A DNA stretch of 57,318 bases from Octopus bimaculoides (taxonomy: Eukaryota), in contig NC_069005.1 of assembly GCF_001194135.2 (NCBI RefSeq), positions 25,888,887-25,946,204 on the forward strand, read 5' to 3'. Under the pieces are notes generated by a model. The model saw only the letters and a program-made list of their open reading frames with translations, had not been told where the DNA came from and did no database searches. The translations under genes and the position numbers were made by a program. Positions 9,733 to 31,239 of the stretch are shown here, one piece after another. The number at the start of each line of letters is the position of its first letter. Position 1 is the first letter of the stretch.

Positions 9733-10203
9733 TATATGTTAACATTATATTCATATCTCTCTACCACATGGTTTCAAGTCCAGGCTAACCATAGTGTTGT
9801 GAGTGGATTTGGTTGATGGAAACTGAAAGAAGCTCATTGTGTCTGTGTGTGTGTGTGGTTGTCCTTGCGCTGACATGACATCACATGATTGTTGTAGGTG
9901 AGAGTCACCATCATGCAGTGTCATTCATTCTCAGGTTACTTGAAAAACATGTTTGGCTAAGGAGAAGTAGTACCTTACTTGGAAACGGGCGAGGGTTGGC
10001 AACAGAAAGGGCATCCAGCTGTAGAAAATCTGCCTTGACAAATTCTTTCTTATCCATACTAGCATGGAAAAGTAGACTGTAAAATGACGGTGACTTTATA
10101 TATATATATGGTAAGTAGCTTGCTTACCAACCACATGGTTCCGGGTTCAGTCCCAAAGCCTTGTGAGTGGATTTGGTAGATGGAAACTGAAAGAAGCCCG
10201 TCG

Positions 10204-10244
<41 letters not shown>

Positions 10245-10411
10245 ATGTTTGTGACTGTGTTTGTTCCCCCAACATCGCTTGACAACCGATGCTGGTGTGT
10301 TTACGTCCCCGTAACTTAGCAGTTCGGCAAAAGAGACCATTAAANNNNNNNNNNAGGCGGTGCTCCAGCATGGCCGCAGTCAAATGACTGAAACAAGTAA
10401 AAGAGTATATA

Positions 10412-10459
<48 letters not shown>

Positions 10460-11374: not shown

Positions 11375-11585
11375 ATGGTCCAAGCCGAAGAAGCGATTCG
11401 GTCCGAGGTGAATACTGACCGAAGTGTTTCTGTGAAACAATGGTCAAGTACTAGCTCTACGGTCAATAACGAGAGACAAATGAGGGACCCTGATGGTCAA
11501 AATTTTGTCTCTTTGCTCCCGCTGAACCCCAATGGAAAGGTCCCTACTGTACCAACAACTCACACTCGTCCACCTTTCAACAGGA
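11375..11585 (+). CDS. ERCC6L: ERCC6L exon
   Basis: ctcttgcag| ... a|gtaagt, phase 0 in and 1 out. Encodes MVQAEEAIRSEVNTDRS...PPFNR. Confidence 0.8.
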
Positions 11586-11599
11586 GTAAGTGACCCTTT

Positions 11600-12420
11600 A
11601 TGTACTCTTTAGTTTCTCTACTCCCTCTCTTTCCTTTGGCCATGTCTCTCTACCTCTCTTCTTCCTCACCCCTTCTCATCCTTACTTATTTTTACTTTCC
11701 CCCCCCCCATTCTTTATTCTCATCTTCCATGCTTACCTCTCTCTTCCCCTCATCTCTCTTTAGTCTTCCTCTTTCCTCTAGTTTCTCTTTAATCGCTTGC
11801 TCTCACTCTACCCCTGTAATCTCTTTTCTCTCCCCCCTCTACTCTCTCTCNNNNNNNNNNNNNNNNNNNNNNNNNNNNNNNNNNNNNNNNNNNNNNNNNN
11901 NNNNNNNNNNNNNNNNNNNNNNNNNNNNNNNNNNNNNNNNNNNNNNNNNNNNNNNNNNNNNNNNNNNNNNNNNNNNNNNNNNNNNNNNNNNNNNNNNNNN
12001 NNNNNNNNNNNNNNNNNNNNNNNNNNNNNNNNNNNNNNNNNNNNNNNNNNNNNNNNNNNNNNNNNNNNNNNNNNNNNNNNNNNNNNNNNNNNNNNNNNNN
12101 NNNNNNNNNNNNNNNNNNNNNNNNNNNNNNNNNNNNNNNNNNNNNNNNNNNNNNNNNNNNNNNNNNNNNNNNNNNNNNNNNNNNNNNNNNNNNNNNNNNN
12201 NNNNNNTACTCTCTCTCCCCCCTCTACTCTCTCTCCCCCCTCTACTCTCTCTCTCCTCCTCTAGTCTCTCTCTCCTCTAGTCTCTCTCTCCTCTAGTCTC
12301 TCTCCCTCTAGTCTCTATAATCTCTCTCTCCCTCTATGCCTCCCCTTCTAATTCACCCCCTCCTCTAGACATTGCTATACCTCTTCCTTCCACTAGCCTC
12401 TCTCGTCTCCACCTCTCTAG
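11600..12420. repeat. CT-rich low-complexity / short minisatellite tract around an N gap
   Basis: Repeated ctctcccccctctact and ctctcctctagt units. Confidence 0.8.
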
Positions 12421-13027
12421 TAAGATATTAGAGAGTGGCAGTAACACAATATTTCTCAACCCTTTTTTTACCCTATGGACCCCTTTGGTCCCTATTTCAC
12501 TCTACTGGACCCTAACACCCTATTGACATCCCCAAAATTATATCGTATCTTTACAATTTTATATTATTAGGAATTGTATAAAAAGGTTGTTAAAATATTT
12601 TGTGAATCACAGGAGTATTACCAATTTATTACAGATAAATTTTTATCAACAAAATCTTATATGGTTCCCCAAGGGCCATATAAGTCCTGGTTGAGAACTG
12701 TTGTTGTAATGTATCAACGTTTCTGTAAAGAAGTTTCCATTTCAGTGAAATATGTGTCTTGAATGGCACAGCAATGCAGAATGGACTACAATAACTGTTT
12801 TAATTTTGGAAAATTACTATTTTTAAATCTCACAACAAGAGATATTCAGCAACAGTACTTTGTAGTAAAGATTATTTGCCAACATAAAATGGCAGTCCTG
12901 GTTTAGGACTAATGTTGCTGTAATTTAGCCTCAGGAGACGTCGTCTCCAGCTGGCTATACGACACGATCTGTGTCCTTATATTTTCGAACAAGAGAATCT
13001 AGCACCCCCACTCAGCTCAAAACAATA

Positions 13028-13072
13028 TCTGTGTATCATGATTTCTGGGTTATTTCTCTTCATCAGCACAGA
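13028..13072 (-). ncRNA. Minimal type I hammerhead ribozyme motif (Penelope-type)
   Basis: Minus strand reads UCUGUG-CUGAUGA-AGAGAAAUAACCCA-GAAA-UCAUGA-UA-CACAGA: 6-bp helix I, intact core, palindromic helix III, weak helix II. Confidence 0.55.
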
Positions 13073-13112
13073 ATAATTGTTTTAATGTAATTATTCATAG
13101 TACCATAGTACA

Positions 13113-13470
13113 AGTCACTGCTATAATCCGATTATAGCAGTGACTCGATCGATTCCTAGCAATATCTGAAGAAAGAATTTTTATATTTCGAAATATTATA
13201 TCAGACTATGGACAATTAAATTTAAACAGTTATTATAGTCCACTCTGCATTGTTGTGTCATTCAAGACCTGTTATATTTCACAAACAATACACAATGCTT
13301 CCAGCAAACATCAATTCCTAGTAATACCTGAAGAAAGCATTTTTATATTTCGAAATATTATATCAAACTATGAACAATTAAATTATAACAGTTATTATAG
13401 TCCACTCTGCATTGTTGTTCCATTCAAGACATATTTCGCAAACAATACACAACGCTTCCAGCAAACTACA
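13113..13470. repeat. 16-bp-arm palindrome followed by a ~162-bp tandem duplication
   Basis: agtcactgctataatc-c-gattatagcagtgact (13113-13145). Duplicated units start at about 13153 and 13315. Confidence 0.85.
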
Positions 13471-13538
13471 ATACTCTCCTATCCATTCCAGTGATTTATA
13501 ATTCTTGATGATATTTTGTTTGTCTTCTTGATGCACAG

Positions 13539-13819
13539 ATGATGATGATGTTGTTGTTGTTGTTAAAGACAGTGATGATGATGATGATGATGATTTCACC
13601 AGTGTTTCAATTGGTAGCAACAACAACAACAGCAGCAGCAGCAGAACTGGAGTCAATGACCTGACAACACCATCTATTGATAGATGGACGATGAATTACA
13701 ATAAGAACAGCAGCAGCAGTACTCTTGGTACCATTTCTAATCCAATCTCTGTTGAAGACTGTTGCTCGGATGAACAGCTATCACCAACCCCTATTGTCCA
13801 CTCATCAGTCCCTAATACA
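13539..13819 (+). CDS. ERCC6L: ERCC6L low-complexity exon
   Basis: gcacag|at ... aca|gtaagt. Open frame; phase 1 in and 0 out fits both neighbouring exons. D/V/N/S runs are encoded by trinucleotide repeats. Confidence 0.7.
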
Positions 13820-14299
13820 GTAAGTCTAAGGAGGAATTTCCTAGCCTTCAGCCATTGAACTGTGACCATGTTGGAGTGCGTAGTATGTAGGGTTTTGTTT
13901 TGTAATTGACCATATTACTTACTGTATTTTAACATGTATAAGGAACCCCCTAATTTTTAGGGCTTAAAATTTTGAAAAAAAAGCTTTGTAAGGGATTATA
14001 ATACTATCCGTGTATAAGAAACTCCCATATTTTTTAACCTAATTTTTTTTGGGGGAAAAAAGGGTTCCTTAGAATATGGTATTTCTGTACAATTTTATTA
14101 TATTGAGCTCTGTTTGTTGAACCTCTAAGTTACATTTTGATGCAAAGGGACACAACACCCTGGTTCTTATGCACAATCACTCACAGACAGCAAGCTGGCA
14201 GAATTGCTAGCATGCTGGGCAAAATACTTTGTGGCATTTTGTCCAACTTTACGTTCTGAGTTCAAATTCTGCTGACGTCAGCTTTGCTTTCTGCCTTTA

Positions 14300-14780
14300 G
14301 CCCTGAGCTCCACAACCACTGACGGGTGTACTTCTGCTCTACAACAGCTTGTTTGCTACAGGCTACATATTTGCCATGCAGAGGGTTTTGTTCTCACCCA
14401 TCAACAGTTGCTGCGCTTCTATCCTGCTGTTCAGCCTGGGTATTATACACGAACTCAATAGCAAATTTTTTGCTCGCCTTCATGATAGAATGAAGCATCT
14501 GATGCCTCTTGTGATTTTCAACAAGTTTTAGCATCCCGTCGTGAGATGTTTCAAGACATTTGGCCAGTCCAGTTGTGGTGGTTTTGTAAGAGATTTCAAA
14601 ATGGATCAAGCCTCGACTTCTTTGATCTCTGGGAAGGTAAAGACGATCTGCATCTGCCTTTGGGTAGTGCACCTCATTTCAAGTCAGCACCTTATGAATT
14701 TTCCTGTCACTTTTCTTTATTTTGCTGATATTCCAGTTCAACACATTGAAACTGTAAATAACTGGAACTGCTAAGGAATT
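14300..14780 (-). mobile_element. R4/Dong-like LINE fragment
   Basis: HYPKADADRLYLPRDQRSRGLI motif. Confidence 0.6.
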
Positions 14781-15010
14781 TATGGCTAACACCTTGTTAT
14801 ATGCATTTAGCTCAAGTTTCGGGACTGCTCAATCTCTCCTATAGCAATCCTTCCGGATTTTCTCTCTCATGCTTGCATGGGGGTTGGGGTAATTGACTCC
14901 CTCCCTCCGCACAAATTGCTGATTTTCTGCCAAAATTTGAAATTATTATTATGATATATTATAAATATTTTATTGTAGATTTTATTGAACTCTATTTGTT
15001 TTTCTTGCAG

Positions 15011-16295
15011 AAATCCTTGTCTGATTCTGTTTGTGAATCTCCTGCTCCTGAAAACAACACTACAAAGACCGGTTCCATTGGCCGGAAATCTTCTATTTTA
15101 CACTCCGATGACCTTCTGAAATCATTCATGTGTAACAATAGTGCGAATTCCAGTCGCCAGCGTCCTCGTCTGTCTGATTCTGTCCGTAAGGCAGAAGACA
15201 CAGCAGTCGATTCGGAGGATGGTACATGGTTTGTTGCTGACTCAGATGATGAAAATGGTACCACTACTGAGATGGGTCGCCATACTACATTAAAGCCAAG
15301 TCTCAATTTCTGTGTAGCAGAATCTGACAGTGAGAATGACATGATTAATGATTCTTGCGCAGATGGTAGCCTGTCAGGAAAGGCTTTGAACAGCACCAAA
15401 GGTAGCAGCAGTAAGAATTTCCGTACACCCTCTTTCAAAGGTGTGTCTTCTGTGGTGCCGAGTAGCTCGCCAAGAACTGAAGGCCGCGAAGAGGAGGAAA
15501 TGGAGACTGTGGCAGATAACTCATTTGAAGGTCAAACAGAACAACGTTTGGGGCATGACCAAAGCAAGAACACAGAATGTAATGGTGAGGGGAACGACAG
15601 CGTTGTCAATGTTAAAAGACACCGAAAGGTATATTGTGTGATAAGTTCTTCAGAAGAGGATTCTGGCTCTGATGGTGTTGATGACGACGACAACAATGAG
15701 AACAAAAGAACCAATGATGACAGCAGCAGTTTCGATGCTGTGCTTCCGAAACTGTCAAAATGTCATCGAAAGAGACTCCTCTCTTCATCAGAGTCTGAGG
15801 CAGGAACAGATTCTGATGGTGAAGGAGAGAATAATATCTCTGTTGTCCAAGAAATGTTGAATATTTCTACTAATCCACACGAGTCACTCATCTCTTCTGT
15901 CCAAGTACGTCCTGTCAAAGTTCGAAGATCGCAACAGTTTAATAATTCCCAAACAACGCAGTCTCCTAGCCTGTCGTCGGCTGCTCGAAAGGGTCCTTTC
16001 GAGGCAGAGCTCAGTGATGCGGATATGGAAGGCGCATCTGCGGTGGTTAAGAACAACAGCTTGGTTGCCCGTGGGGCTGGAGGGACATCTGATGGGGTCG
16101 GTGAAAGGGAGGAGGACGGAAATGGAAAAAGAGAAGAAAACGATGTAAAGGAGGATGAAGACAGTGAAGAGGAGGAAGAAGAAGAGGGAGATGATGAACA
16201 AGAGGAAGAAAACGAGATGGATGTAATAAATAAAGAGAGAAAGGAAATATCAGTAGTAAGGGAAGAAAATGAAGACAGTGAGGAAGAGGAAATAG
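15011..16295 (+). CDS. ERCC6L: ERCC6L long Ser/Asp/Glu-rich disordered exon
   Basis: tttcttgcag| ... g|gtatgt. 1285-nt open frame (ORF 14951-16321), as expected for the long acidic C-terminal region of PICH. Confidence 0.85.
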
Positions 16296-16452
16296 GTATG
16301 TTGTTTCTTTATCGCAAGTGAATGATTTAAAAGAGGCAGGTGGGTGACGAGTCTACGGTTGGTGGTAGCAGGGGTGAGGGGCATCCTGTTCTTCAGCATT
16401 ACTACCTTGTGCCCATGGTAACTCAGTTCTAGGTTAATCCCTTAGCCCTTAA

Positions 16453-16673
16453 CCCTTTAGCGTTCAGATTATTCTATCAAACGTAATATGCTTATTGATT
16501 CACATTGATTTGAATTAATCATGCATTATCTCATATCTTCAAGATCTTGATGGTGTAATTACTTAATGTAGAATAACATTGTAGGGTAGGTGTGAGAGCC
16601 TGGATCTGGTCAGTTTGAACATAAAACAGATTAAATATTTTGGCCGGATATGGCCGGTTTAAATACTAAAGGG
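16453..16673 (+). mobile_element. TTAA-flanked MITE family F
   Basis: TTAA|ccctttagc...ctaaaggg|TTAA. Other copies at 16674-16865 (inverted, partial), 20358-20856, about 27925-28141, 36391-36881 and 40925-41135. Confidence 0.75.
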
Positions 16674-17295
16674 TTAAACTGGTCGTAGCCAGTCTAAATA
16701 TTCCACCTGTTTTATGTTAAATTGGCCAGATTTTTGGCTTCTCACGCCTACCCTACAATGTCATTCTAAAAATTAAGCAGTCACATAGTTGAGATCTTGA
16801 AGCTGCAAGATAATGTGTGATTAACTGAAAGCAACGAATAAATAAGCGTTACATTTCACAGAATATGAATAATATGAAGGTTGTTCAAATCTGAGATAGA
16901 AATTGTAACCATTTACAGCAAATCGACAAATTTGCAGATCTATCAGACCATTGATTTAACTGCTTTAGTTACTCTTTTACTTGTTTCAGTCGTTTGACTG
17001 CGGCCATGCTGGAGCACCGCCTTTAGTCAAGCAAATCGACTCCAGGACTTCTTTGTAAGCCTAGTACTTATTCTAGGCCTGAGGCTATAGAAGACACTTG
17101 CCCAAGGTGCCATGCTGTGAAACTGAACCCAGAACCATGTGGTTGGGAGGCAAACTTCTTTATATTTTAAAATACCCATAGAAGCGTTCTATAAAGTCCT
17201 TCCAATCCCAGACCTGTATTGAATCAATATTTGAAAGTTTTTATTCTTTCTTTTCAATGGAAAAAAATTATCTCATGTTTATATTTCTTTTGAAG

Positions 17296-17356
17296 AATTG
17301 CCATTTCTTTCCAACGAAAAGAGTGAAGAATTCAACAACTTTGTCAGGGATGCCAG
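17296..17356 (+). CDS. ERCC6L: ERCC6L exon (start of C-terminal TPR-like helix)
   Basis: ttttgaag| ... ag|gtaggt, phase 1 in and 2 out. Encodes ELPFLSNEKSEEFNNFVRDAR. Confidence 0.8.
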
Positions 17357-18282
17357 GTAGGTATTTTGTTTTCTCTTAGATGATTTTACCAGCAGAACAT
17401 TTGTCCAACCTTAACTTTCAGTAACTAAGGGACTTAGAAAAGCAAAATAAATTTGTGGCCAAGATAATTGATATAATTTGACCTTTAGCATTCAGATTTC
17501 TGTCTAATGTGATGCTTATTTATTCACATTGATAAAAATTAGTCATGCATCACCTTGTAGTTTTATATCCTGGTGTTTGATAAATAATTTAATAAAGCAA
17601 GGGGAAGAAGTATTTACATGATGTACAACTTTTACTGTTTCTGCTTGCGAAGACCTGTTCAGGCAAGCGAAATCGAAAATGAAATAAATTCGACGACTGG
17701 CACCCATGCCAACATCGTCTCCTTCATTGGACACGAAACTCGGCTTGCGAAGACCTGTTGGGGCAAGCGAAAGCGAAATCGTGATAGCACCTGTGCCCAG
17801 CGTCGCCTTCCTGGCACGTGTAAAGACATTCGAGCGAGATCGTTGCCAGTGCCGCTGGACTGGCTCCTGTGCAGGTGGCATGTAAAAGCACCCACAACAC
17901 TCTCAGAGTGGTTGGCGTTAGGAAGGGCATCCAGCTGTAGAAACTCTGCCAAATCAGATTGGAGCCTGGTGTAGCCATCTGGTTTCACCAGTCCTCAGTC
18001 AAATCGTCCAACCCATGCTAGCATGGAAAGCAGGCGTTAAATGATGATGATTTGTTTGTTGTTCATATATCTGTCACATCTGTCCCTTAGCTCATTTTTT
18101 TTTTGTTTGAATTATGCAAATTGCCTAGGCCATGTGTCTTTACATCTAAATCCCTTGGCTACAGGAAGTAAGGTAGAACTGTTGTCTTGGTGATGATATC
18201 TGTTGAAGTAGAAACACGTACCCCTGACCATCCTCTTATCTCTGAACAAAAACTAATGTTCCTTTCTCCCTTTTGTTTTCAG

Positions 18283-18412
18283 AAAGTCTTATCTAAGTGA
18301 GAATTACAAAGAGGCCTTGTATTCAACGCTGAAGGCTCTTAATCTCGATTCAAGTGACTTAAAATTACAGACATTTGCACTGAAACTGAGAAAACTCTGT
18401 AAACCTCAATGA
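18283..18412 (+). CDS. ERCC6L: ERCC6L terminal exon (TPR-like)
   Basis: ttttcag|a, phase 2 in. Encodes KSYLSENYKEALYSTLKALNLDSSDLKLQTFALKLRKLCKPQ*, resembling human QEALNCLVKALDIKSADPEV. Confidence 0.87.
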
Positions 18413-18668: not shown

Positions 18669-19576
18669 GGAGGAGGCACCCAAAAGAAACTAGAATTTTG
18701 CAATATTATTTTAATCACTTAGTTTTACATGTTGATGCTTTTGTTGTCTTCAAAGTATTCTCCATTTGAAGCGATGCATCGGTCAAGACGCATTTTCCAC
18801 TGTACGTAGTAGTCCTGGGAACTCTTGCGAAGTTATGCCTTTCAATGCTTCCGTCGTTTTTTTCCCTTCATATCTTCCACATCTGCAAATTCCATAGCAC
18901 CACCTTTCATCACCAGTGATGACCTTTCAATAAAAATAGTCCAGATCAAATTCCACTTGTTCTCTCCGTTCACGACACGCATTCAGTCGTGACTGCTTTT
19001 GATCTTCCGTAAACAAGCGAGGTACAAATTTTGCTGCAATTCTTTTCATTTGCAATTCTTTACTCAAATTTCATTGGCAAGAGCTCCAGGACACACCAGT
19101 CATATCAAACAAGTTCGTCAATTGCTTGGTGACGGTCGTCCACGATCAGTTCATGAATTTCATTTGTTCAGTAAGAGTCGACGTTCATCGCGAATGGAGT
19201 TGATCTTCAAGCGACAAGTGACCATTCCTAAAGCGTGAGAACCACTTGTAAACTTGTTTTTCTCATGGCAGTGTCCCCCTTGTAAGCTATTTGAAAAGCA
19301 TGACAACTGTGTTGGCTGTCATCTATCCCTGCAGAAAACAGGACTTCATGTAGGCATGTTGTTCCTTCATTTCAGCCATTGCAAAAATTGATGAACAGGG
19401 GAAGAAGCTCTGCTAAACAGAGATGCACCATGTGGTTGTACAACTTCACACAATGACCCCTGGTCGGTGGACTGATGCCTGAGGGTCGCACCCAGCGGCT
19501 CCTAGTGGCGGGAGCCTGAACTGCAATAGGTTTGTTCCACAGAGAACGTTTCCAGTTACGTTTGGGTGCCTCCCCT
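18669..19576 (-). mobile_element. Mariner element, internally deleted and decayed
   Basis: TA-flanked TIRs (ggaggcacccaaa). Minus-strand remnants MAEMKEQHAYMKSCF, QVYKWFSRFRNG, KFVPRLFTEDQKQSRL, VITGDERWCY jump directly to C-terminal RLDRCIASNGEYFE. Confidence 0.85.
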
Positions 19577-21024
19577 TATGTGAGTGTATGTGTAAAGAGA
19601 GAGGGACATAATAAATAAAAAAAGATACAATTTTTCTTCTTACTCCTTATTTTTGACTTGTAATATATAACATGATAAAGCTGATGACCAAAAAAGGTAT
19701 ATACATGTATGTATGTATATAAATATTTGTATAATATCTCAAATTCTTGTTGTGTGATTTTTATAGGTCTTCTTTTATAATGGGCTGTATATCATCATCA
19801 TCATCATCATTTCTATGCTTGTATAAGTGGGTGGATCTTCAGCACAGTATCTCCCGACTTGTATTTTTTTTTTTTTTTTGTGAGGTTCCACATCCTGAGT
19901 CCAGTCTTCAACCTCTTCCCATCTTTCTTTTGTCCCTACAGTTCTCTTTCTATAGAGACATCCTGGGCCCTCTTCGCCCAGAAGTCATCATCCCACACTA
20001 CATGTCTGTACTAGCGCAGTCCCCTCTTTTGCATCTTGCCCACTACATCAAATTCCTCTTGGTTTCAGTTTTCTCTTTCCAAGAAGTTTGTTTAATTGTG
20101 ATTTTATCCAACCTCTTCCCCTCTCAGATTCACACACTTATTGCAGTGGTCCTTCAGTTTTTCTAAGCCCTGTCAAAGAACTCGGAAGGTTGGGCCTGGA
20201 ACCAGGCCTTTCACGATACCCTTAAAGCCAGAAATTTTTCAGCACCCCCTCATATAAAAGTATGAAAATACCAATAATGTTTTTGTCATTTGACACAGAT
20301 GCCTGCACTTACACTTATTGGCTGGTGTGCTAATTGAACCTATATCCCTTAGAACATAACCTTTTAGCATTTAAACTAGCCAAATCCAGCCCCTCACACC
20401 TACTCTACAATGTCATTCTAAAAATAAACACTCACATTATTGAATTCTCAAAGCTATGAGATATCATCATCATCATCATCATCTAGCATCCGTTTTCCAT
20501 GCTGGCATGGATTGGACAGTTCAATTGGAACTGGTAAGCTGGAGAGCTGCTCCAGGCTCCAGTAATCTGTTTTGGCTTGGTTTCTATGGCTGGATGCTCT
20601 TCCTGACACCAACAACTCCACTATCTTTACCAGGTGCCTTTTACATATTACCAGCATGGGTGTTTTTAATGTGTCACTGGCACTGGCTACGACTACGATT
20701 TCATTTAGCTTAGCATGTTTTCTCAAGCACAGCAGATCACCAAAAGTCTTGGTTACTTTTCATCGCTGCCATGAGACTCAGATAATGGATGTTTAATTCA
20801 AAACAATGCGAATAAACAAACATCACTTCGGACACAGTATTTTGAATGCTAAACGGTTAATGTAGAGCTAACTGCAGAGTCCTCAACTCCCTGGTAATGT
20901 CACGCAAGATAATGTATTGTGTATGTGTTTTAATGCAGTAATGAAAAAGAAACAAAACAAATCATAAATTCATACAGAATACTCTGCAAAATTTATTGAA
21001 TACTTTCATTTGCTGAACCAAAAT

Positions 21025-21066
<42 letters not shown>

Positions 21067-21603
21067 TTATCTTTGTGTGTGCATGAGCATGCAGATGTGT
21101 ACATGTATGTGTGTGTGTGTATATAATATATATATATATATATATACATACATACATACATACAAGTGTGTCTGTGCTTGCGTGTGCAGGTATATGTGTA
21201 TGTAAACGTGTGTGTGTATATATATATATATATGTATCTGTATATATATGTATATGTATATTTAACCCTATTCTGACCATATTTCTAATGAAATACTCTG
21301 CTGAAATACACATAACAATTCATGCTTTTGAAAATAAGAATTTGGACGGAGTTAGTATAAAATAACTTTGTTGTTTTTATTAAAGCTGATGTTAGCAAAA
21401 GATTCTGTTGCTTAAAGTTAGGATGGGAAGTATATAATTATGAGCTACATGCAGTTTTATACATTGAAGATCTTATCTAGGCTTGTTTTAAAACCTGCCT
21501 AACTAAAATCTCCAATGTATGAAACTCTTAGTAGCGCCTAGGTATATACAATATTTATCTCACCAGATGGAGTACTTTTTTTGTTGATCTTACCTTAAGT
21601 AAA

Positions 21604-22471: not shown

Positions 22472-22606
22472 TCAGTACTGGACCCTGTTCGGTTGGTTAT
22501 TACTGATCAACGCTGTGTTATCTCCGACGAAATTCAGTTGGAAACACAGACAGTTGATCTCGTTGCACCCTGGATCACAGCTGCAATCACACTTGCAGTT
22601 TCCAAA
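22472..22606 (-). CDS. Uncharacterised Cys-rich membrane protein, terminal exon
   Basis: ctttctttctccag|, phase 0. Encodes FGNCKCDCSCDPGCNEINCLCFQLNFVGDNTALISNNQPNRVQY* (7 Cys). Confidence 0.8.
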   Translation of the reverse strand, partial: FGNCKCDCSCDPGCNEINCLCFQLNFVGDNTALISNNQPNRVQY

Positions 22607-23806
22607 CTGGAGAAAGAAAGAGAGTTGGAGATAGAGTGGCGAATAGTAACACTATGTAACAATTTTATTTATTATTATTTTTCTTTGGTCTTTGGTCAGT
22701 AAGCATTATTTCCTATTTGCTTCAATCATCATCATCATCATCATCATCGTTTAACGTCCGCTTTCCATGCTAGCATGGGTTGGACGATTTGACTGAGGAC
22801 TGGTGAAACCAGATGGCTACACCAGGCTCCAATCTGATTTGGCAGAGTTTCTACAGCTGGATGCCCTTCCTAACGCCAACCACTCAGAGAGTGTAGTGGG
22901 TGCCTTTACGTGCCACCCGCACAGATAGATACATACATACATACGCACACATATACATATACCATTTATCTTTTACATTCATTAGACTGTAGCCATGCTG
23001 AGGCACCACCTTGATAATAATAATAATAATAATTGTTTCTACTATAGACACAAGGCCAGAAACTTGAGGGGGTTAGTCGATTACATCGACCCTAGTGATT
23101 CACTGGTAACTTAATTTATCAAACCCCTGAAAGTACGAAAAGCAAAGCCAACCCCGGTGGAATTTGAACTCAGAATGTACTGATGGACGAAATACGGCTA
23201 AGCAATTTGTCCAGCGTGCTAACAATTCTGCCAGACAGACAGACACACACACACATTTACAAAATCAGCGTTTATCAAAAGAAATCACTACTACCCCCTT
23301 CAAACTTTGCTTTTGTAACCTAGCATCACTGTTTTCCATTACATTTCAAACAGATTCAGCACTGAGTTGTCATCATCTCAGAGATTCAGCATCCGAAGAT
23401 CATACTTCGCCACCCCATCCCATATCTTCCTGGCTCTAGCTCTTCCCGCAGTTAGAGATCATAAGGTTTACAATATAGTTTTGAAAAACCACAGTGTCTT
23501 GCAGGAATTTTTGTCCAAGCGATGCATTCCATCCCACAGAACAAAACTTAGTGTGTGTACGTAGAGCTTTTTCTTGATTTTTCCATAGGATTCCACTATT
23601 TTTTAAGATGTACTGTTCCTTGCTTGTGAATGCAGCCTAGGTAAGTATCTTGAAGAAGCAAGTAAGACAAGATAGTAAAATAATAGACCATTGACAATGA
23701 TGAGTACAATTTTTTTCAGCTGGATTTTCGACCTTATTGCAAGCCTCACCTGTTCTTCCTCCCAACTTTTTCAGATTCTAGATGTCAAGACAAAGAAAAT
23801 GATATA

Positions 23807-24192
23807 GGCGCAGGAGTGGCTGTGTGGTAAGTAGCTTGCTTACAAACCACATGGTTCCGGGTTCAGTCCCACTGCGTGGCACCTTGGGCAAGTGTCTTCT
23901 ACTATAGCCTCGGGCCAACCAAAGCCTTGTGAGTGGATTTGGTAGACGGAAACTGAAAGAAGCCCGTTGTATATATGTATGTATATGTGTGTGTCTGTGT
24001 TTGTCCCTCCACCATCGCTTGACAACCGATGCTGGTGTGTTTACGTCCCCGTAACTTAGCGGTTCGGCAAAAAGAGACTGATAGAATAAGTACTAGGCTT
24101 AAAAAGAATAAGTCCTGGGGTCGATTTTTTTCGACTAAAGGCGGTGCTCCAGCATGGCCGCAGTCAAAAAAATGACTGAAACAAGTAAGAGT
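23807..24192 (+). mobile_element. tRNA-derived composite SINE family A (head + microsatellite + conserved tail)
   Basis: A-box TGGCTGTGTGG and B-box GGTTCAGTCCC. Near-full copies also at 10656-11055, 56080-56475, 43425-43790 (-) and 53745-54070; partial copies at about 1175-1440, 7020-7200, 10100-10400, 16975-17160, 34500-34680, 35890-36100, 39000-39180 and 42250-42460. Confidence 0.85.
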
Positions 24193-24430
24193 TTTTTTAA
24201 CCTTGAAAATGGCCAGGGTGGTGCTTACGACACTCTTAATAAATGCCTCATATGTAGTGTATAATATGTAGTGCATAATATATAGTGTATAATATATAAC
24301 ATTGTATATTCATCATCATCGTTTCACATCTGTTTTCCATGCTGGCACAGGTTGGATGGTTTGACTGGAGCCTGTAGGGCCAGGGGCCTCACCACGCTCC
24401 ATTGTCTGTTTCTGATGTGATCTTTGTCAG

Positions 24431-24770
24431 ATGTTACTGCCCTCTTCCTCCCCAAACATAGTCCCTTCTATCCTGGTAACCAAACACCCGACAGAGATGG
24501 GGATCAAAGCTGTCCTTCACCCTTCCTACAGTCAAGATTTTCCTTCCTGTGACTTACAGTTATTCCCTAAGCTGAAGAAGATGATAGAAGCAATGATAAA
24601 GGTTCTGGACATCTTCAATTTCAAAGACATCCATGGAGCCTTCACAAGGTTGCTGGAGTGCTACGACAAAGTCCATTGAAACCAGCAGATTCTACTTTGA
24701 AGGAGATTTAGTTTTGCAATTCTTTGAAATTAATAAATGTCTCCTTTGAACATGTCTCAAAACTTCAAGA
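24431..24770 (+). mobile_element. Mariner transposase C-terminal remnant
   Basis: HPSYSQDFPSCDLQLFPKLKK resembles the mariner HPPYSPDLAPCDF.LFPKLK motif. Confidence 0.7.
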
Positions 24771-24799
24771 ATGCACATCATATTGTTCTTATCATTTAA

Positions 24800-25300
24800 T
24801 GTTGTGCAAGAGTGAAGACAGCGCCGGATTGGTCATGTGATATGGATGAATGTCAACAGATTCATAAAGAAGTGCTGACGACTCAAACTGGATGGAACTT
24901 GTAGAAGAAGGAGACCCAGGAAGACAGGGATCGAAATAGCGAAGGATAATCTCAGGACATTGGACCTTACAGAAGAGATGTCAAAGGATCGGAATATCTG
25001 GTGCCTTGCTGTAATTGAGAAGACCTGTCCTCCACAGTAAAAGTGTTAATGCCCCTCCCCCTGCTGAAGGGGATTGGCCCGTAAGAACCCTGTGCTGGTG
25101 CCACATAAAAGGCACTTGTGTCTGCACCAGATAATAGAAACCGTGTCAGCGTTACATAAAAGTGCTCATGCTGGTACCATGTAAAATTCTTGGCTTTAGG
25201 AAGGGCATCAAGCCTTAGAAACCTAGCCAAATCAAACTGGAGCCTGGTGCAGCTCCCTGGTTTGCCATCATGGACAACGAATGTTAAAGGATGAGGATGA
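24800..25300 (+). mobile_element. RTE LINE 3' remnant (ORF end + 3'UTR)
   Basis: GHVIWMN...RRRRPRKT.IEIAKDNLRTLDLTEEMSKDRNIWCLAV is an RTE C-terminus that continues into family D sequence. Similar remnants at 44410-44760 (+) and 19800-20160 (-). Confidence 0.7.
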
Positions 25301-25544
25301 GTGAGTCAGACAGGGAAAGACAAGATAAAGCAATTTACATGATTAATGTTAATAATAATAATAAAAAAACCAGTTGAATTACTTACACCACATGTGTTAC
25401 CAGACCCTGCACCAGCACAACATTGACATAGAATTATATCAACACAGTCCATTTGCTGTAAAGTGGAAAGAAGATAGATACAAAGTAATATTTACAATAC
25501 TGATATCTAGTTGTATCGACATAGTCCAGTTCGCTGTAAAGTGG

Positions 25545-25880
25545 GAGAAGGAGGTGGTGCATGGCTGAGAATCATGAGGTAGTGAGTTCGATTCCCGGAC
25601 TTGGCTATGTGTTGTGTTCTTGAGCAAGAATACTTTATTTCACCTTGCTCCAGTTCACTCATCTGTAGAAATGAGTTGCGACATCACTGGTGCCAAGCTG
25701 TGTCAGCCTTTGCCTTTCCCTTGGATAACATTGGTGGTATGAAGAGGGGAGGCCGGTATGCATGGGCGACTGCTGGTCTTCCATAAATAACCTTGCCCAG
25801 ACTTGTGCCTCGGAGAGGAACTTTCTAGGGGCAATCCCATGGTCATTCATGACTGAAGGAGGTCTTTGCCCCTTTACCCT
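25545..25880 (+). mobile_element. Third tRNA-headed SINE
   Basis: B-box gagttcgattcccgg, a gtgttcttgagcaag central motif, and a ctttacc tail. Confidence 0.55.
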
Positions 25881-26745
25881 ATATATNNNNNNNNNNNNNN
25901 NNNNNNNNNNNNNNNNNNNNNNNNNNNNNNNNNNNNNNNNNNNNNNNNNNNNNNNNNNNNNNNNNNNNNNNNNNNNNNNNNNNNNNNNNNNNNNNNNNNN
26001 NNNNNNNNNNNNNNNNNNNNNNNNNNNNNNNNNNNNNNNNNNNNNNNNNNNNNNNNNNNNNNNNNNNNNNNNNNNNNNNNNNNNNNNNNNNNNNNNNNNN
26101 NNNNNNNNNNNNNNNNNNNNNNNNNNNNNNNNCCAACATACTGCTATTTCTAAATTTTCAGTATGTTGGAGAAGCAACTCAAGCTAATCCCTGTATATTT
26201 ATGATTATAAATGGTTTTACCGATAAAGGTTTTTTCATACTGAACTACTTGGCAAAATTGTTAATTATTAATTCTATTACTAATTGATGATTCCCTGCCC
26301 TTATTTCTATATATATATATAGTAATATATATATAGCTTGACATATAATATTGGTTTCAAATTTTGGTTCAAGGCAGCAATTTTGAGGTAGGGGGTTGCA
26401 TCGACCCAAGTATTCAACTGATATTTAATTTATCAACTCTGAAAGGATGAAAGGCAAATTTGAACTCAGAATGTGAAGATGGATGAAATGCCACAGCATT
26501 TTGCCTGCTGTGCTAATGATTCTGCCAGCTTACTGCTTTAGTTTTACATATAATATTGATGCAGAATTATGTCAACATTGTAGATCTGTCTTCACGTTTT
26601 GAGTTCTAATATTTGGGCCAGTCTGTTCTAACAGAACATCCATGTTTAAATGGAGATAATTATTACCTCCTGGTAGTAACACTCTCTCTGTTACTATTAT
26701 ATGTTTTTTAACAAGGTTGATAGAGAGAAAAAAGAGTTATCTTAC

Positions 26746-26892
26746 CTTCCTTTGGGGACAGCAGGCATCTAAGCATTTTTCCACACTTGGCACCGAACAA
26801 GTGCATTTCTCTGAGATAGCCAGGCAGCACTTGATACAACTGTTGTCAGGCTTGGATCCACAGATATTACACTCGGAACAGACACCTCGCTT
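26746..26892 (-). CDS. Uncharacterised Cys-rich membrane protein, exon 3
   Basis: tttttctcaacag| ... aag|gtaaga, phase 0/0. Encodes KRGVCSECNICGSKPDNSCIKCCLAISEKCTCSVPSVEKCLDACCPQRK (11 Cys). Confidence 0.83.
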
Positions 26893-27354
26893 CTGTTGAG
26901 AAAAAGTGAAAGGTCAGAGTTTAGAGAAAGTAAGGAAACAAAATTACTCACACTCCTTTCTACTCTCTCCCCCTTCTTTTTCAATTGGGGTATCCATGTA
27001 TCTACTCTACAGTAAGACACCTATCTCTGTGCCTCTGTACCTTTAATCTTCCAACTAATCCAAAGCCACAACCCTCAATACAGCTCCCCCACTCGCAGTT
27101 GAGGTGGGTTTAGTTTTGTCTTGCAAGACACTTGGTGACCTTATTGGTGTTGGTGCCTCATAAAAAGCACCCGGTACACTCTGTAAAGTGACTTGTGCGG
27201 GGAAGGGCATCAGGCTGTAGAAACCATGCCAAAATAGATAATGGAACCTGATGCAACCTTGCCAGCTCCTGTCAAACTGACCAACTCATGCCAACATAGA
27301 AAACAGACGTTAAATGATGATGATTTTTTTCCCAATAAATGTAAATATTGTTAA

Positions 27355-27575
27355 CCCTTTCGTTACTGTATTCATTTTGAGATGCTCTGTGTTTCTTTCA
27401 ATTAATTTTAAATATTACAAAGAATTTAGTAAAATAACTTAGTTATCATTCAGCTAGTCTTAGGAACATAAATTGTGACTAAGGCTTGGTGGAAGATTTT
27501 AATTCAGAACTTATGAAAACAAGACATTTGTACTCGGAGCCAGATCCGGTTTCAGCCGGGTTGGTAACGAAAGGG
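27355..27575 (+). mobile_element. TTAA-flanked MITE family E, intact copy
   Basis: TTAA|ccctttcgttac...gtaacgaaaggg|TTAA; perfect 12-bp TIR. Confidence 0.85.
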
Positions 27576-28659
27576 TTAATAGCTACTCAAGTCAGACATG
27601 ATTAAAGTTTAAAGGTTTACTCAATCAGAGCTGACCTAGATCTAAACAAAAACAACAACAGTTCCTTCTAAAGACTAAAGGACTTCATAATAATGTATTC
27701 TAGAAACACTTAGAAAGGCTTGCCGAAAGAACACACTTTTGTCTGACAAGTATTCCGACTATTGTTTTAAAGCTGTTACTCGGTGAATTTCAACCCAAAC
27801 CAGACAATTTGCATTTTCATTCAATGCATATTTAGTCAGATTAATTCTGTATTTTCTATTGTATTTTATTAAAAACCAATAATCCCCACTCTCATGCATA
27901 TTACACACAATAAATAGCTACTTTAGTATTCAGATTATGCTATCGAATAAAATACTTATTTATTCACATTGTTTTGTATTAATCAAACATTATCTCGCAG
28001 CTTTGAGATCTTGATGATGTGATTGTTTATTTTTAGAATGACATGGTTTTAGGATTGGTGTGAGAGGATAGATCTGGCTGCTTTGAACATAAAACAGGTA
28101 GAATAGCTGAGCTAGATATGACAGGTTTAAATGCTAAAGGGTTAAAATCAGTTAAGCTGTTATTGTAATGTTCTGGCTTCAACCAAAACTGTTTTAGCCA
28201 ATATGTCAGTTGCTAGTAAAGGTGTTGGACTCACAACTACAAAGTTGTGGGTTCAATACTGGGATTGAGGCTGCACATTGCCTTTGAGCTAGTCATTTCA
28301 GGCTACGCCCATCTGAAAATTTATCCTGGCCAAATACTGATGCAACCTCTCTCTCTCTCTGTCTCTAGCTGCTGCATTACTGGAAATATTTTGCTGGGTC
28401 AACGATTGCATATAACTACATGTCACCAGCACCGGTGCCTTTCATGTGATGACATTTGAATGTTTACACTATTTTTACACCACATTCTATGTTGACTTCT
28501 ACACTGGAAAATAAAGAATATAGAGGCTTCTTTTACAGAACATGTGACCTGGAAATTTTGTACAGAAGATAAGAGGAAGGTGTGTGCTGATTTGATATCA
28601 AAATATCCATAGCCCATAGCCTATGCCAGTGGGTGTAACCAGCCCATTTATGAATACCC

Positions 28660-29220
28660 CTCATTCATTGGACAATAAACCTTGCTTGTGAAGACCTACT
28701 GAGGCAAGTGAAATTAAAATCAAAATTGCTGACGTGGCTGATGACAGTACCGCCTGATTGGCACTCATGCCAGTGGAACGTTAAAAGCACATCTGAACGT
28801 GTTCGTTGCCAGGGCCACGGATTGGCTCCCGTGCTGGTGGCACATGAAAAGCACCATTTGAGTGTGATCGTTGCCAGCGTCGCCTTACCGGCACACATGC
28901 CAGTGGCATGTGAAAAACAACATTTGAGCGTGGTCGTTACCAGTGCTGCTGGACTGGCTCCTGTGCAGGTAGCAGGTAAAAACACCTTTTCAGCATGAGT
29001 GTGGTCATTGCCAGAACCGCCTGATTGGCCCTCATGCCGGTGGCACGTGAAAAGCACCCACTACACTCTTGGAGAGGTTGGCGTTAGGAAGGGCATCCAG
29101 CTGTAGAAACTTTGCCAGACCAGATTGGAGCCTGGTGCAGCCTCTGGCTCACCAGTCCTCAGTCAAACCGTCCAACCGATGCCAGCATGGAAAGCAGACG
29201 TTAAACAATGATGATGATGA
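28660..29220 (+). mobile_element. RTE 3'UTR-derived repeat family D (long copy)
   Basis: Ends ...ccaacccatgc(c/t)agcatggaaagc(a/g)gacgttaaac(gat)n. Copies at about 3155-3310, 5605-5800, 7560-7890, 17600-18050, 20461-20770, 22740-22920, 27150-27325, 33140-33325, 36500-36789, 37140-37680, 38810-38995, 44590-45025 and 53380-53460. Confidence 0.85.
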
Positions 29221-29251
29221 TATCTAGAGATTAAATTAAATTTTGTCTCAC

Positions 29252-29386
29252 CGTAAGACATTGCTGAATAATGGTGAATATGATGATAACCAAGAGGTAG
29301 ATACCAATAGCAATGGACAGGATGGACGCTGGGTGGTAAATGAGTGTGACTGGTGTTGGCTGTGGGGTCGACATAATCGGCACCAT
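29252..29386 (-). CDS. Uncharacterised Cys-rich membrane protein, exon 2 (TM helix)
   Basis: ttttccag| ... acg|gtgaga, phase 0/0. Encodes MVPIMSTPQPTPVTLIYHPASILSIAIGIYLLVIIIFTIIQQCLT. Confidence 0.8.
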
Positions 29387-30876
29387 CTGGAAAATTCCAA
29401 AAAGAATCAAAATATTTAGCAAATGTGAAGTAAATATAATTTTATTGATTCAGAAAAAAAAAAAAAAATTAACAACAACAACAATAATAATAACAACTGA
29501 TTGTCAGTTGCTTGACCGTAACCAGTTGAGCATGTCCCTTAGTGGCTGATGATATGTGCATCTTTGATCTCGAGCAGAATTAGTTGGGTAGCATCATAGC
29601 CATACGTTGAGAGGAATTCTTTGGGGTTTCAATAACTCAGCCCCAGAAACATAGGTGTTTTGTTCATCATCCTTCAACAACCCTCATTCGGGGACCTTTT
29701 GAGTGGGATGGGCTACTTGACCTGAAGATAATTCTGAGTCTCACCTGCAAAGTCATGCATTGTTTATCTTGATATGAGATCACCGTGTCGCACATATGTT
29801 TGTGATGCATGTGCCTGGTGCACCCTTATCAGATGAGTGGTCATGATGGGTATATTGGACTTTGTACACTTGTACCCCAGTGTCACTCTAATGGCATACA
29901 CTGCTCTCTCGGATTAAGTCAATTAGATTGACTTCAGTACATAACTGGTACTTAATTTATCGACCCCAAAAAGATGAAAGGCAAAGTCGACCTCAGTGGA
30001 ATTTGAACTCAGAATGTAAAGACAGACGAAGTACCATTAAGCATTTTGCCAGGTTGCTAACGTTTCTCCCACCTCACCGCCAGCATCACAATAATAATAA
30101 TAATAATAATAATAATCCTTTCTACTATAAGCACAAGGCCTGAAATTTTGGAGAAGGGGCTAGTCGATTAATATTGACCCCAGTAAGTAACTTGTACTTA
30201 TTTCATCGACCCCCTAAAGGATGATAGGCAAAGAAGGACCTCAGCTGAATTTGAACTCAGAACATAAAGACAGACGAAATGCCACTAAGCGTTTTGCCCG
30301 GTGTGCTAACGATTCTGCCAGCTCTCCACCTTAGATATAATAAATAACAATAATAATCCTTTCTACAACAGGCACAAGGCCTGAAATATGGGGTAGGGGA
30401 TAAGTCGATTACATTGACCCTAATTTTTGACTGGTACTTATTTTATCGACCCCAAAAGGATGAAGGGCAAAGTTGACCTCAGCAGAATTTGAAATCAGAA
30501 TGCAAAGAAGGATGAAATGCTGCTAAGCATTTTTCCTGGCATGCTAATGAGTTCGCCAGTTGGCCACCTTTAACAACAAGAGTACTCAGAGAGCGCAAAC
30601 CTCCACCAAGGCAACACCAACGTCCTCTCAACCATTACCCAGAGATAGTTTTTAGAATGAGAATATCTGAAATAAACTCGACTGCTCTCACAAACGAGAA
30701 TACTAAAAAATGAACCCGACCGTTCTCAAAAATTGGCGATCTTACGTTAAGTACTTTAGTTTAACGACCTGGCAGGATTCGAACTCAGAACATAAAGACA
30801 CATAATTAAATATAACATTTAGCTGGTTTTCGCGGAGAAGGGAGTATGTATAATAGTCGTCGGTATTTAAGAGAAC

Positions 30877-31072
30877 TGGTACTACTAAAGCAGCGTGGTC
30901 CCGAACGCGCAAGCTAGTCGTGAGTGGTCGATCCTAACCCTAACCCTAACCCTAAATAGTATTCATTTGCGCGCGCGCGCACTTTTTGTAGGATCGACCA
31001 CTCACGACTAGCTAGCGCGGACGCGCAACTGCGCGACTGCGAGTTCGGGACCACGCTGCTTTAGTAGTATCA
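30877..31072. mobile_element. Fold-back element with telomeric core and 6-bp TSD
   Basis: About 55-bp composite inverted arms, GAGAAC direct repeats at 30871-30876 and 31073-31078, and CCTAA(CCCTAA)3 at 30933-30955. Confidence 0.8.
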
Positions 31073-31194
31073 GAGAACTTTATCAACACTGTAAAGGGGT
31101 TAACAGGTGTTATCGATCTCAGCAAGATTCGAACTCAAAAAATAAAGTGACGCGAAAAAGAAAAAAAATGAAAGTTTTATAACTTCGTCCTTAC

Positions 31195-31239
31195 CATAGT
31201 CCCAAAGAAAACATCCTCGCTGTCCTCTGTCCCGAACAT
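31195..31239 (-). CDS. Uncharacterised Cys-rich membrane protein, exon 1
   Basis: ATG...ATG|GTAAGG; 15 codons MFGTEDSEDVFFGTM, phase 0. Could instead be partly 5'UTR, with translation starting at the exon-2 Met. Confidence 0.6.

What the first reader, a model, noticed from the sequence alone, without database searches (positions are those of the whole stretch)
22472..31239. Hidden 4-exon gene: single-pass membrane protein with an 18-Cys tail after the TM helix
Seen in sequence: four minus-strand exons (45, 135, 147 and 135 nt), each with canonical splice sites and all phase 0. They join into MFGTEDSEDVFFGTMMVPIMSTPQPTPVTLIYHPASILSIAIGIYLLVIIIFTIIQQCLTKRGVCSECNICGSKPDNSCIKCCLAISEKCTCSVPSVEKCLDACCPQRKFGNCKCDCSCDPGCNEINCLCFQLNFVGDNTALISNNQPNRVQY (153 aa, 19 Cys). 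The ORF track shows only exon 2 in this frame. There is no signal peptide, one hydrophobic helix (about residues 35-55), and KR right after it. Inference: the positive-inside rule puts the CxxC/CC/CxCxCxC cluster in the cytosol, so it could be a membrane-tethered metallothionein-like metal or redox module, or a heavily S-palmitoylated adaptor. I recognise no named family. This is the best candidate for an undescribed system here.
Basis: partly seen in the sequence, partly recalled or inferred. Interest (0 to 1): 0.82.

Follow-up and report, generated by a model that had tools for sequence, protein, structure and literature searches.

The report
Conserved membrane protein with cysteine-rich tail
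The gene is real but has five coding exons, not four, and is already annotated in octopus as an uncharacterised protein; it belongs to an old, unnamed animal family (from molluscs to mammals, apparently including a human gene in the 16p11.2 interval) whose function nobody has studied.

Summary
The four minus-strand exons exist at the stated coordinates with canonical splice sites. The model is incomplete. The five exons translate exactly to RefSeq XP_014783669.1 (Octopus bimaculoides LOC106878842 isoform X1), 176 aa with 24 Cys, so the gene is not hidden. The gap sits in an intron and hides no exon: gap-free O. sinensis and Argonauta loci and a spliced cuttlefish transcript are colinear. dN/dS between O. 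bimaculoides and O. sinensis is 0.037. An exhaustive profile search finds 57 cluster representatives in molluscs, annelids, a flatworm, a tardigrade, a sea urchin, lamprey, ray, reptiles and mammals. All are "uncharacterized" or carry spurious keratin-associated names. Two intron positions are identical from octopus to dolphin. The dolphin orthologue lies directly upstream of ALDOA, where papers list human LOC112694756. There is no match in Pfam, in PDB sequences or by fold search. Charge asymmetry (67 of 68 members) supports an outside N-terminus and a cytosolic Cys tail. The function, probably a metal-thiolate domain with palmitoylated juxtamembrane cysteines, is inferred and untested.

The parts
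31195..31239 (-). Coding exon 1 (45 nt): start codon and acidic N-terminus MFGTEDSEDVFFGTM
   Evidence: The donor is gtaagg and a TAA lies directly upstream of the ATG. The same 45-nt exon is present in O. sinensis and Argonauta. RefSeq isoform X2 instead starts at M16 in exon 2.
29252..29386 (-). Coding exon 2 (135 nt): S/T/P-rich outer tail plus the single transmembrane helix (about residues 34-57), ending ...QQCLT
   Evidence: AF2 pLDDT is 86-97 over the helix. The intron after this exon sits at the same position and phase in Argonauta, Sepia, Diadema and dolphin.
26746..26892 (-). Coding exon 3 (147 nt): juxtamembrane KRGxCxxCxxC and 'module A' (CC..SE.C.C..PS...CLD.CCP.RK), 11 Cys
   Evidence: This is the best-conserved block of the family: G63, C65, C71, C82, C90, P95 and C105 hold the consensus residue in at least 80% of 72 sequences.
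25887..26132 (.). Assembly gap (246 N) inside intron 3; hides no exon
   Evidence: The gap is also present in GCA_001194135.2. The gap-free O. sinensis and Argonauta introns contain no coding segment, and the protein is colinear with the Sepia mRNA contig.
25387..25455 (-).
   Evidence: It has AG/GT flanks and is phase 0. It is needed to reproduce XP_014783669.1 exactly. It is near-identical in Argonauta and Sepia. Diadema has a 72-nt exon here, and the dolphin has no separate exon at this position.
22472..22606 (-). Coding exon 5 (132 nt plus TGA): 'module B' NCKCDCSCDPGCNEINCLCFQLNF (7 Cys) and a variable C-terminus
   Evidence: C138, C146, N150, C151, C153 and F154 are conserved across the family.

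Best explanation
Identity. Window 22472-31239 (-) holds the five-exon gene LOC106878842 of Octopus bimaculoides. Its 176-aa product belongs to an ancient, unnamed animal family. NCBI labels the vertebrate members "LOC112694756 homolog".

Shown. The protein has a short, acidic, Cys-free, S/T/P-rich N-tail and one transmembrane helix with a conserved Tyr. A roughly 100-residue tail follows, with 24 Cys in fixed positions. Exon 3 encodes module A, exon 4 a cassette and exon 5 module B. The gene is under strong purifying selection.

Inferred mechanism.
- The helix acts as a reverse signal-anchor. The N-tail faces the lumen or outside, and the Cys tail sits in the reducing cytosol.
- The cysteines closest to the membrane (C58, C65, C68, C71) are S-acylated.
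- The rest folds around metal-thiolate (most likely zinc) clusters into a compact membrane-apposed domain that serves as a docking or scaffold surface.
- Because every exon is phase 0, exon skipping can produce membrane-free or shortened forms.

Rough likelihoods: identity and family over 0.97; cytosolic tail about 0.8; metal-cluster domain with juxtamembrane acylation about 0.4.
For: - Gene model. The five exons have canonical sites and translate exactly to XP_014783669.1. The window is identical to GCA_001194135.2.
- Conserved structure. O. sinensis has the same exon sizes, and Argonauta differs only in exon 2, 120 nt instead of 135. Sepia genomic DNA matches a spliced 1048-nt transcript contig in seven blocks.
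- Selection. dN/dS is 0.037.
- Family. 57 representatives score E<1e-3 and 29 score E<1e-10 in an exhaustive HMMER search. They span molluscs, annelids, a flatworm, a tardigrade, a sea urchin, lamprey, ray, reptiles and mammals. Pairwise, octopus versus dolphin gives E=2e-15 and octopus versus Diadema gives 3e-16.
- Introns. Two phase-0 intron positions are identical from octopus to dolphin.
- Topology. 67 of 68 members have more K/R in the 12 residues after the helix than before it, and none is reversed. N-tails have a median of 21 aa, almost no K/R, no Cys and 39% S/T/P.
- Folded domain rather than only lipidation sites. Non-Cys positions E88, P95, L101, D102, P106, N150 and F154 and the Cys spacings are conserved across phyla. 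The octopus tail is 24% Cys, with 6 CxC, 3 CC and 3 CxxC motifs and no His.
Against: - No experiment bears on topology, metal binding or acylation.
- AF2 gives only pLDDT 41-68 for the tail even with 33 sequences. That fits a metal-dependent fold that cannot be modelled without ions, but it also fits disorder.
- No Pfam metal-binding family matches.
- Cys number varies widely in the family, from 7 to 35 (some of these models are truncated), and the central cassette is replaced in vertebrates. Not all cysteines can therefore be structural ligands.
The transcript evidence is from cuttlefish.
Confidence: 0.5

Rival explanations
1. The tail is mainly a multiply S-palmitoylated lipid anchor or adaptor, like LAT/PAG-type transmembrane adaptors or the Cys-rich endodomains of viral spike proteins. 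Most cysteines would be acylation sites that pin the tail to the inner leaflet and sort the protein into ordered membrane domains. No metal would be involved.
For: The predicted topology is type III with a short outer tail. Cysteines sit at the cytosolic end of the helix and just after it (C58, C65, C68, C71). Cys number varies between members. AF2 confidence in the tail is low.
Against: Cys spacings and several non-Cys residues are conserved over about 100 residues from molluscs to mammals, which lipidation sites alone would not need. There are no conserved tyrosine or other docking motifs of the adaptor type. The distal module B is the best-conserved part and is duplicated as a unit in Capitella.
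Confidence: 0.2
2. A membrane-tethered metallothionein-like buffer. The tail would bind and release Zn, Cu or Cd dynamically for metal homeostasis or detoxification, or act as a redox sink, rather than forming a fixed structural domain.
For: The tail is 24% Cys with CxC, CC and CxxC motifs and no His. The median Cys count in the family is 21, close to the 20 Cys of mammalian metallothionein (own knowledge, a lead only).
Against: No metallothionein family matched in Pfam for any of 33 members. Conserved hydrophobic and aromatic residues (17 I/L/V/M and 3 F in the tail; F154 conserved) are atypical of metallothioneins. Sequence conservation across phyla is much higher than is usual for metallothioneins.
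Confidence: 0.15
3. The orientation is the opposite one (type II). The Cys-rich part would be lumenal or extracellular and disulfide-bonded, forming a small knotted ectodomain that acts as a ligand or receptor.
For: Dense, positionally conserved cysteines are typical of extracellular disulfide-rich domains. Some members have N-x-S/T sequons after the helix (66 in 9280 residues).
Against: The charge bias points the other way in 67 of 68 members, with none reversed. N-tails are short, acidic and lack K/R, as expected for translocated N-tails. Sequon density is higher in the N-tails (16 in 1277 residues) than after the helix. The Cys count is odd in many members and varies widely.
Confidence: 0.1
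4. The reader's four-exon, 153-aa product is the true or main product, meaning the 69-nt exon is skipped.
For: The exon is a phase 0/0 cassette, so skipping keeps the frame. The dolphin orthologue has no separate exon at that position.
Against: Both RefSeq isoforms of O. bimaculoides and O. sinensis, all O. vulgaris models, Argonauta and the Sepia transcript contigs include it. The exon is almost invariant among cephalopods.
Confidence: 0.04

Closest known systems
Vertebrate 'LOC112694756 homolog' proteins (human LOC112694756 at 16p11.2, mouse Gm57854, rat LOC103691235): predicted and uncharacterised
   Same: The architecture is the same: a short S/T/P-rich N-tail, a helix with a conserved Tyr, R-x-C-L-x-x-x-G-x-C, module A (CC..C.E.C....PS....LD.CCP) and module B (C.C.C....P.C....NC.CF). 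Octopus versus dolphin gives 32% identity and E=2e-15. The two intron positions and phases are identical.
   Different: Mammals lack the separate 69-72-nt cassette exon and end right after module B (...CFEIKLR). The genomic neighbourhood differs: ALDOA and PPP4C in dolphin, against ESS2 and an SNF2-family helicase in octopus. I did not retrieve the human protein itself. The link rests on NCBI's naming of orthologues and on the gene order given in PMC11354020.
Transmembrane adaptor proteins with juxtamembrane palmitoylation (LAT, PAG/Cbp, LIME, NTAL)
   Same: No signal peptide, a short outer N-tail, one helix, and cysteines directly at the cytosolic face. This works-like comparison rests on own knowledge.
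   Different: Those adaptors carry a single CxxC and a long tail with tyrosine motifs. Here there are 24 Cys over 100 residues and no conserved tyrosine. No sequence similarity was detected.
Metallothioneins
   Same: High Cys content with CxC, CC and CxxC motifs, no His, and about 20 Cys.
   Different: This protein is membrane-anchored and has conserved hydrophobic and aromatic positions. It has no Pfam metallothionein match and is strongly conserved between phyla.
Sprouty/SPRED Cys-rich (SPR) domain and tesmin/TSO1 CXC domain
   Same: These are cytosolic Cys-rich domains of about 100 and 40 residues that associate with membranes by palmitoylation (SPR) or hold Zn3Cys9 clusters (CXC). A C-x-C-F-like motif recalled from memory was the lead.
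   Different: Neither PF05210 nor PF03638 appeared for any of 33 members, even at E<=1. Neither domain is preceded by a transmembrane helix.

Membership tests
Unnamed animal 'LOC112694756-like' TM plus Cys-rich-tail family | Significant sequence similarity over helix, module A and module B | tested here: met
   In the profile search, 29 representatives score E<1e-10. Pairwise E-values are 2e-15 against dolphin and 3e-16 against sea urchin.
Unnamed animal 'LOC112694756-like' TM plus Cys-rich-tail family | Signature residues Y45, G63, C65, C71, C82, C90, P95, C100-L-D, C105-P, C119/C121/C122, C138, C146, N150, C151, C153, F154 | tested here: met
   All are present in the octopus protein. Each holds the family's consensus residue in 60-92% of 72 sequences.
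Unnamed animal 'LOC112694756-like' TM plus Cys-rich-tail family | Phase-0 introns directly after ...CL-x (end of the helix exon) and after module A | tested here: met
   The positions are identical in O. bimaculoides, Argonauta, Sepia, Diadema and dolphin.
Unnamed animal 'LOC112694756-like' TM plus Cys-rich-tail family | Short Cys-free N-tail and K/R only on the C-side of the helix | tested here: met
   In octopus the N-tail has 0 K/R, 4 D/E and 11 S/T/P in 33 residues. In the family, 67 of 68 members show the same bias.
Metallothionein | Match to a metallothionein family model | tested here: not met
   No metallothionein family appeared in hmmscan of the octopus protein at E<=10 or of 33 members at E<=1.
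Metallothionein | Binds several metal ions through thiolate clusters | not testable with these tools
   This needs purified protein with ICP-MS or spectroscopy.
Sprouty (PF05210) / tesmin-TSO1 CXC (PF03638) | Match to the domain model | tested here: not met
   Neither model matched any of the 33 members scanned. The PDB profile search found nothing related.
Palmitoylated transmembrane adaptor proteins (LAT/PAG type) | Short outer N-tail, one helix, juxtamembrane Cys motif | tested here: met
   The sequence features are present. Acylation itself was not tested.
Palmitoylated transmembrane adaptor proteins (LAT/PAG type) | Several conserved cytoplasmic tyrosine-based docking motifs | tested here: not met
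   There is no conserved Tyr in the tail. The only conserved Tyr is inside the helix.
Keratin-associated proteins (name given by NCBI to several mammalian orthologues) | Match to keratin-associated protein models; no transmembrane helix | tested here: not met
   No such Pfam hit was found in the members scanned, and all full-length members have a helix. The name is a by-product of Cys richness.

The most novel reading that the evidence does not exclude
The tail is a previously unrecognised, membrane-anchored polynuclear metal-thiolate domain (Zn/Cu or Fe-S) with a new fold, conserved from lophotrochozoans to mammals. Its human member would be an overlooked protein-coding gene between TLCD3B and ALDOA, inside the 16p11.2 BP4-BP5 copy-number interval.
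Probability: 0.3. Interest if true: 0.7.

Novelty: new variant of a known kind. Interest (0 to 1): 0.45.

Why it matters

The wider point is that this small protein defines an animal-wide family that has kept its helix, its Cys pattern and even its intron positions across protostomes and deuterostomes. Yet the family has no Pfam entry, no solved or confidently predicted structure, and no functional paper among those searched.

Its mammalian orthologue sits next to ALDOA. NCBI's naming of orthologues and the published gene order (PMC11354020) link it to human LOC112694756, which appears in gene lists of the 16p11.2 deletion/duplication interval (neurodevelopmental and obesity phenotypes). It has apparently never been considered there as a candidate.

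A defined domain signature and a clear topology prediction make the family directly testable.

Tried and rejected
- Pfam scans of the 153-aa and 176-aa proteins, of isoforms and of 33 family members gave only scattered sub-threshold hits to transmembrane-helix families.
- PDB sequence searches with two profiles found only helix-driven or insignificant matches: the sodium-channel beta-2 helix at E=0.06, phospholipase A2 at E=5.6 and the poliovirus receptor at E=2.1.
- AF2 with 5 sequences gave pLDDT 40.7. With 33 sequences it gave 59.9, and only the helix was confident. Foldseek of that model against the PDB gave 0 hits, which is uninformative for the tail given the low confidence.
- Literature searches returned only gene lists or nothing. 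The terms were LOC112694756, AC093512.2, ENSG00000285043, Gm57854, LOC103691235, LOC106878842, LOC115224561 and A0A0L8G6W0, plus a keyword combination. I could not confirm that Ensembl AC093512.2 is the same gene as LOC112694756.
- The Sprouty, CXC and metallothionein resemblances recalled from memory were not borne out by the model scans.
- A hidden exon in the N gap is rejected.
- A second copy in the window is rejected: tblastn finds only the five exons.
- The organisms behind the intronless ENA metagenome members could not be identified.


Full report
**Observation.** Each is flanked by a pyrimidine-rich acceptor ending in AG and a GTAAG or GTGAG donor, and all are phase 0. They join to the quoted 153-aa sequence with 19 Cys.

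A word-indexed search of 5.8 billion proteins returned a 176-aa protein, XP_014783669.1, [quoted passage not shown].

Those residues, QMDCVDIILCQCCAGAGSGNTCG, are encoded at window 25455-25387 (-). This is a 69-nt phase-0 exon with acceptor ...ctttacag and donor gtaagt. The five exons together translate exactly to XP_014783669.1. The window is base-for-base identical to GCA_001194135.2 CM046625.1, gap included. The product has 24 Cys, all between residues 58 and 153.

**The assembly gap.** The gap at 25887-26132 lies in the intron between exon 3 and the missed exon, more than 430 nt from either exon, so no frame crosses it. I tested in three ways whether it hides a further exon.
- The O. sinensis locus has no N at all and the same exon sizes, 45/135/147/69/132 plus stop. 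Argonauta hians also has five phase-0 exons, with only exon 2 shorter at 120 nt.
- Their gap-free introns at this position (1592 and 637 nt) contain only repeat-derived open frames and nothing resembling the family.
- A 1048-nt Sepia pharaonis transcript-like contig (Logan assembly of run ERR4031017) carries the uninterrupted 495-nt CDS. It maps to the Sepia genome in seven blocks, including the 135-, 147- and 69-nt exons. This also counts as spliced-mRNA evidence for the model in a cephalopod.

tblastn finds no second copy in the window.

**Selection.** Between O. bimaculoides and O. sinensis there are 19 synonymous and 3 non-synonymous differences: dS 0.196, dN 0.007, dN/dS 0.037. At greater distances dS is saturated. 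By dN against Argonauta and Sepia, the Cys tail is the slowest-evolving region: 0.13 and 0.25 for the tail, 0.17 and 0.52 for the helix, 0.62 and 0.72 for the N-tail. The C-terminal half is nearly invariant between octopus, Argonauta and cuttlefish.

**Family.** An exhaustive HMMER profile search of 1.84 billion cluster representatives found 57 proteins at E<1e-3 and 29 at E<1e-10. Almost all are 100-400 aa with the same layout. Names and sources place them in these groups:
- bivalves and gastropods (Saccostrea, Gigantopelta, Nucella, Patella);
- annelids (Capitella, Paralvinella);
- a cestode (Schistocephalus) and a tardigrade (Paramacrobiotus);
- a sea urchin (Diadema);
- lamprey, a manta ray, geckos and turtles;
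- many mammals.

Every name is "uncharacterized", "hypothetical", "LOC112694756 homolog" or an obviously composition-driven label. The labels include keratin-associated protein 10-x, sperm mitochondrial-associated cysteine-rich protein and Mst84Db. The mouse entry is "predicted gene 57854".

Direct BLASTP gives E=2e-15 for octopus versus dolphin and 3e-16 for octopus versus Diadema.

Exon mapping shows all coding exons are phase 0. The intron after the helix exon (...CL-x | x-R/Q-G-x-C) and the intron after module A sit at identical positions in octopus, Argonauta, Sepia, Diadema and dolphin. Diadema has a 72-nt exon where octopus has the 69-nt one.

The dolphin orthologue lies directly upstream of an aldolase (PF00274) gene and a Metallophos gene. 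That matches the published human order TLCD3B, LOC112694756, ALDOA, PPP4C in the 16p11.2 BP4-BP5 interval (PMC11354020). I did not see the human protein itself.

**Signature.** In a 72-sequence alignment the best-kept positions, in octopus numbering, are Y45 in the helix, R56, L59, G63, C65, C71, C82, C83, E88, C90, C92, P95, C100-L101-D102, C105-P106, C119, C121, C122, C138, C146, N150, C151, C153 and F154.

**Comparison with known families.** Nothing matches.
- Pfam gives no family for the octopus protein at E<=10 and no recurrent family among 33 members at E<=1. In particular there is no metallothionein, Sprouty or tesmin-CXC model.
- PDB sequence profiles give only helix-driven or insignificant hits.
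- AlphaFold2 with 33 sequences is confident for the helix only (pLDDT 86-97). The tail scores 41-68, and Foldseek against the PDB returns nothing.
- Nine papers mention LOC112694756, all as an entry in gene lists. The other identifiers give nothing useful.

**How it probably works.**

*Shown:*
- There is one hydrophobic stretch and no other, hence no cleavable signal peptide.
- In 67 of 68 members with a detectable helix, the 12 residues after it hold more K/R than the 12 before it, and none is reversed.
- N-tails have a median length of 21 aa, are Cys-free and acidic, and are 39% S/T/P. N-x-S/T sequons are denser there (16 in 1277 residues) than after the helix (66 in 9280).

*Inferred from the positive-inside and charge-difference rules (established knowledge):* the protein is type III, with the N-tail outside or lumenal and the Cys tail in the cytosol (about 0.8).

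In a reducing compartment, 24 cysteines with conserved spacing and conserved neighbouring residues are best explained by metal-thiolate clusters that hold a small domain together. The cysteines at and just after the membrane face (C58, C65, C68, C71) are likely S-acylation sites. I put this combined reading at about 0.4.

The main rivals are a purely palmitoylated anchor or adaptor (0.2), a dynamic metallothionein-like buffer (0.15) and an inverted topology with a disulfide-rich ectodomain (0.1).

The modular phase-0 exon structure fits predicted isoforms that drop the helix exon. These are seen in O. vulgaris CAI9740714/CAI9740713, mouse Gm57854 and a macaque entry. One isoform drops module A (Prolemur). 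These are annotation models, not verified transcripts.

**Verdict.**
The topology and the "no named family" claim hold. "Hidden" and "four-exon" do not.
- The gene model itself is already in RefSeq and UniProt.
- Still undescribed are the family as such, its breadth across animals, its conserved intron positions and its signature.
- I rate it a new variant of a known kind: single-pass proteins with Cys-rich cytosolic tails.
- Interest is moderate. It would be higher if the tail proves to be a new metal-cluster fold, or if the human member matters in the 16p11.2 interval.

Noticed in passing
window 31850 onward (+): An ESS2 (Pfam Es2) gene starts at 31850, only 610 bp head-to-head from this gene's ATG at 31239, which suggests a shared bidirectional promoter region. 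The same arrangement occurs in O. sinensis and Argonauta.
   Followed up: partly
window about 12472-18412 (+): The 3' part of a 1441-aa SNF2-family helicase gene (SNF2-rel_dom, ResIII, Helicase_C) lies tail-to-tail with this gene, about 4 kb from its stop codon. The order is conserved in O. sinensis and Argonauta.
   Followed up: no
window 23125-23209, 29964-30048, 30212-30296, 30450-30534; inverted pairs 22815-22907 / 29050-29142 and 24305-24401 / 29126-29222: Several copies of SINE-like interspersed repeats, in both orientations, fill the introns. They account for many of the spurious ORFs in the region.
   Followed up: partly
P0005, P0007 (O. vulgaris); P0159 (mouse); P0157 (macaque); P0165 (Prolemur): Annotated isoforms drop the helix exon (exon 1 joined to exon 3) in an octopus and in mammals, or drop module A. 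All exons are phase 0, so the frame is kept. If real, the family makes both membrane-bound and soluble forms.
   Followed up: no
L007 (dolphin) 10001-15735, with neighbours at 19088-21581 and 24567 onward: The mammalian orthologue sits immediately upstream of ALDOA and PPP4C. Some Ensembl-derived UniProt entries even label it as aldolase (P0165), so expression values reported for LOC112694756 may be confounded with ALDOA.
   Followed up: partly
L009, L010, L011, L012 (ENA assemblies ERZ25069837, ERZ25071366, ERZ25878734): Intronless family members lie on 57-345 kb contigs of metagenome assemblies. On L010 a second ORF of the same length (163 aa) lies head-to-head and may be a paralogue, though it was not compared. 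On L011 and L012 the neighbour is an uninterrupted 1359-aa BP28CT ORF. The host is an unidentified intron-poor eukaryote.
   Followed up: partly
P0013 (Capitella teleta ELU13760.1), residues about 205-230: This protein carries a second copy of module B (GNCNCQCGSTGCENCDCLCFSCKL) at its C-terminus, which suggests module B is an autonomous unit.
   Followed up: no
L002 (O. sinensis) about 16122-16590: Intron 3 holds an open frame of 157 codons with the ...GKRGRGRPRTRWLDTIKS motif. From memory this is typical of the tail of a retrotransposon ORF, so it is probably a LINE fragment.
   Followed up: no
window, 12 N runs (e.g. 5035-5248, 11851-12206, 47046-47564, 52374-53137, 54080-55025): The window carries 3522 N in 12 gaps. 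Gene models elsewhere in it, such as ESS2 and the helicase, may be affected.
   Followed up: no
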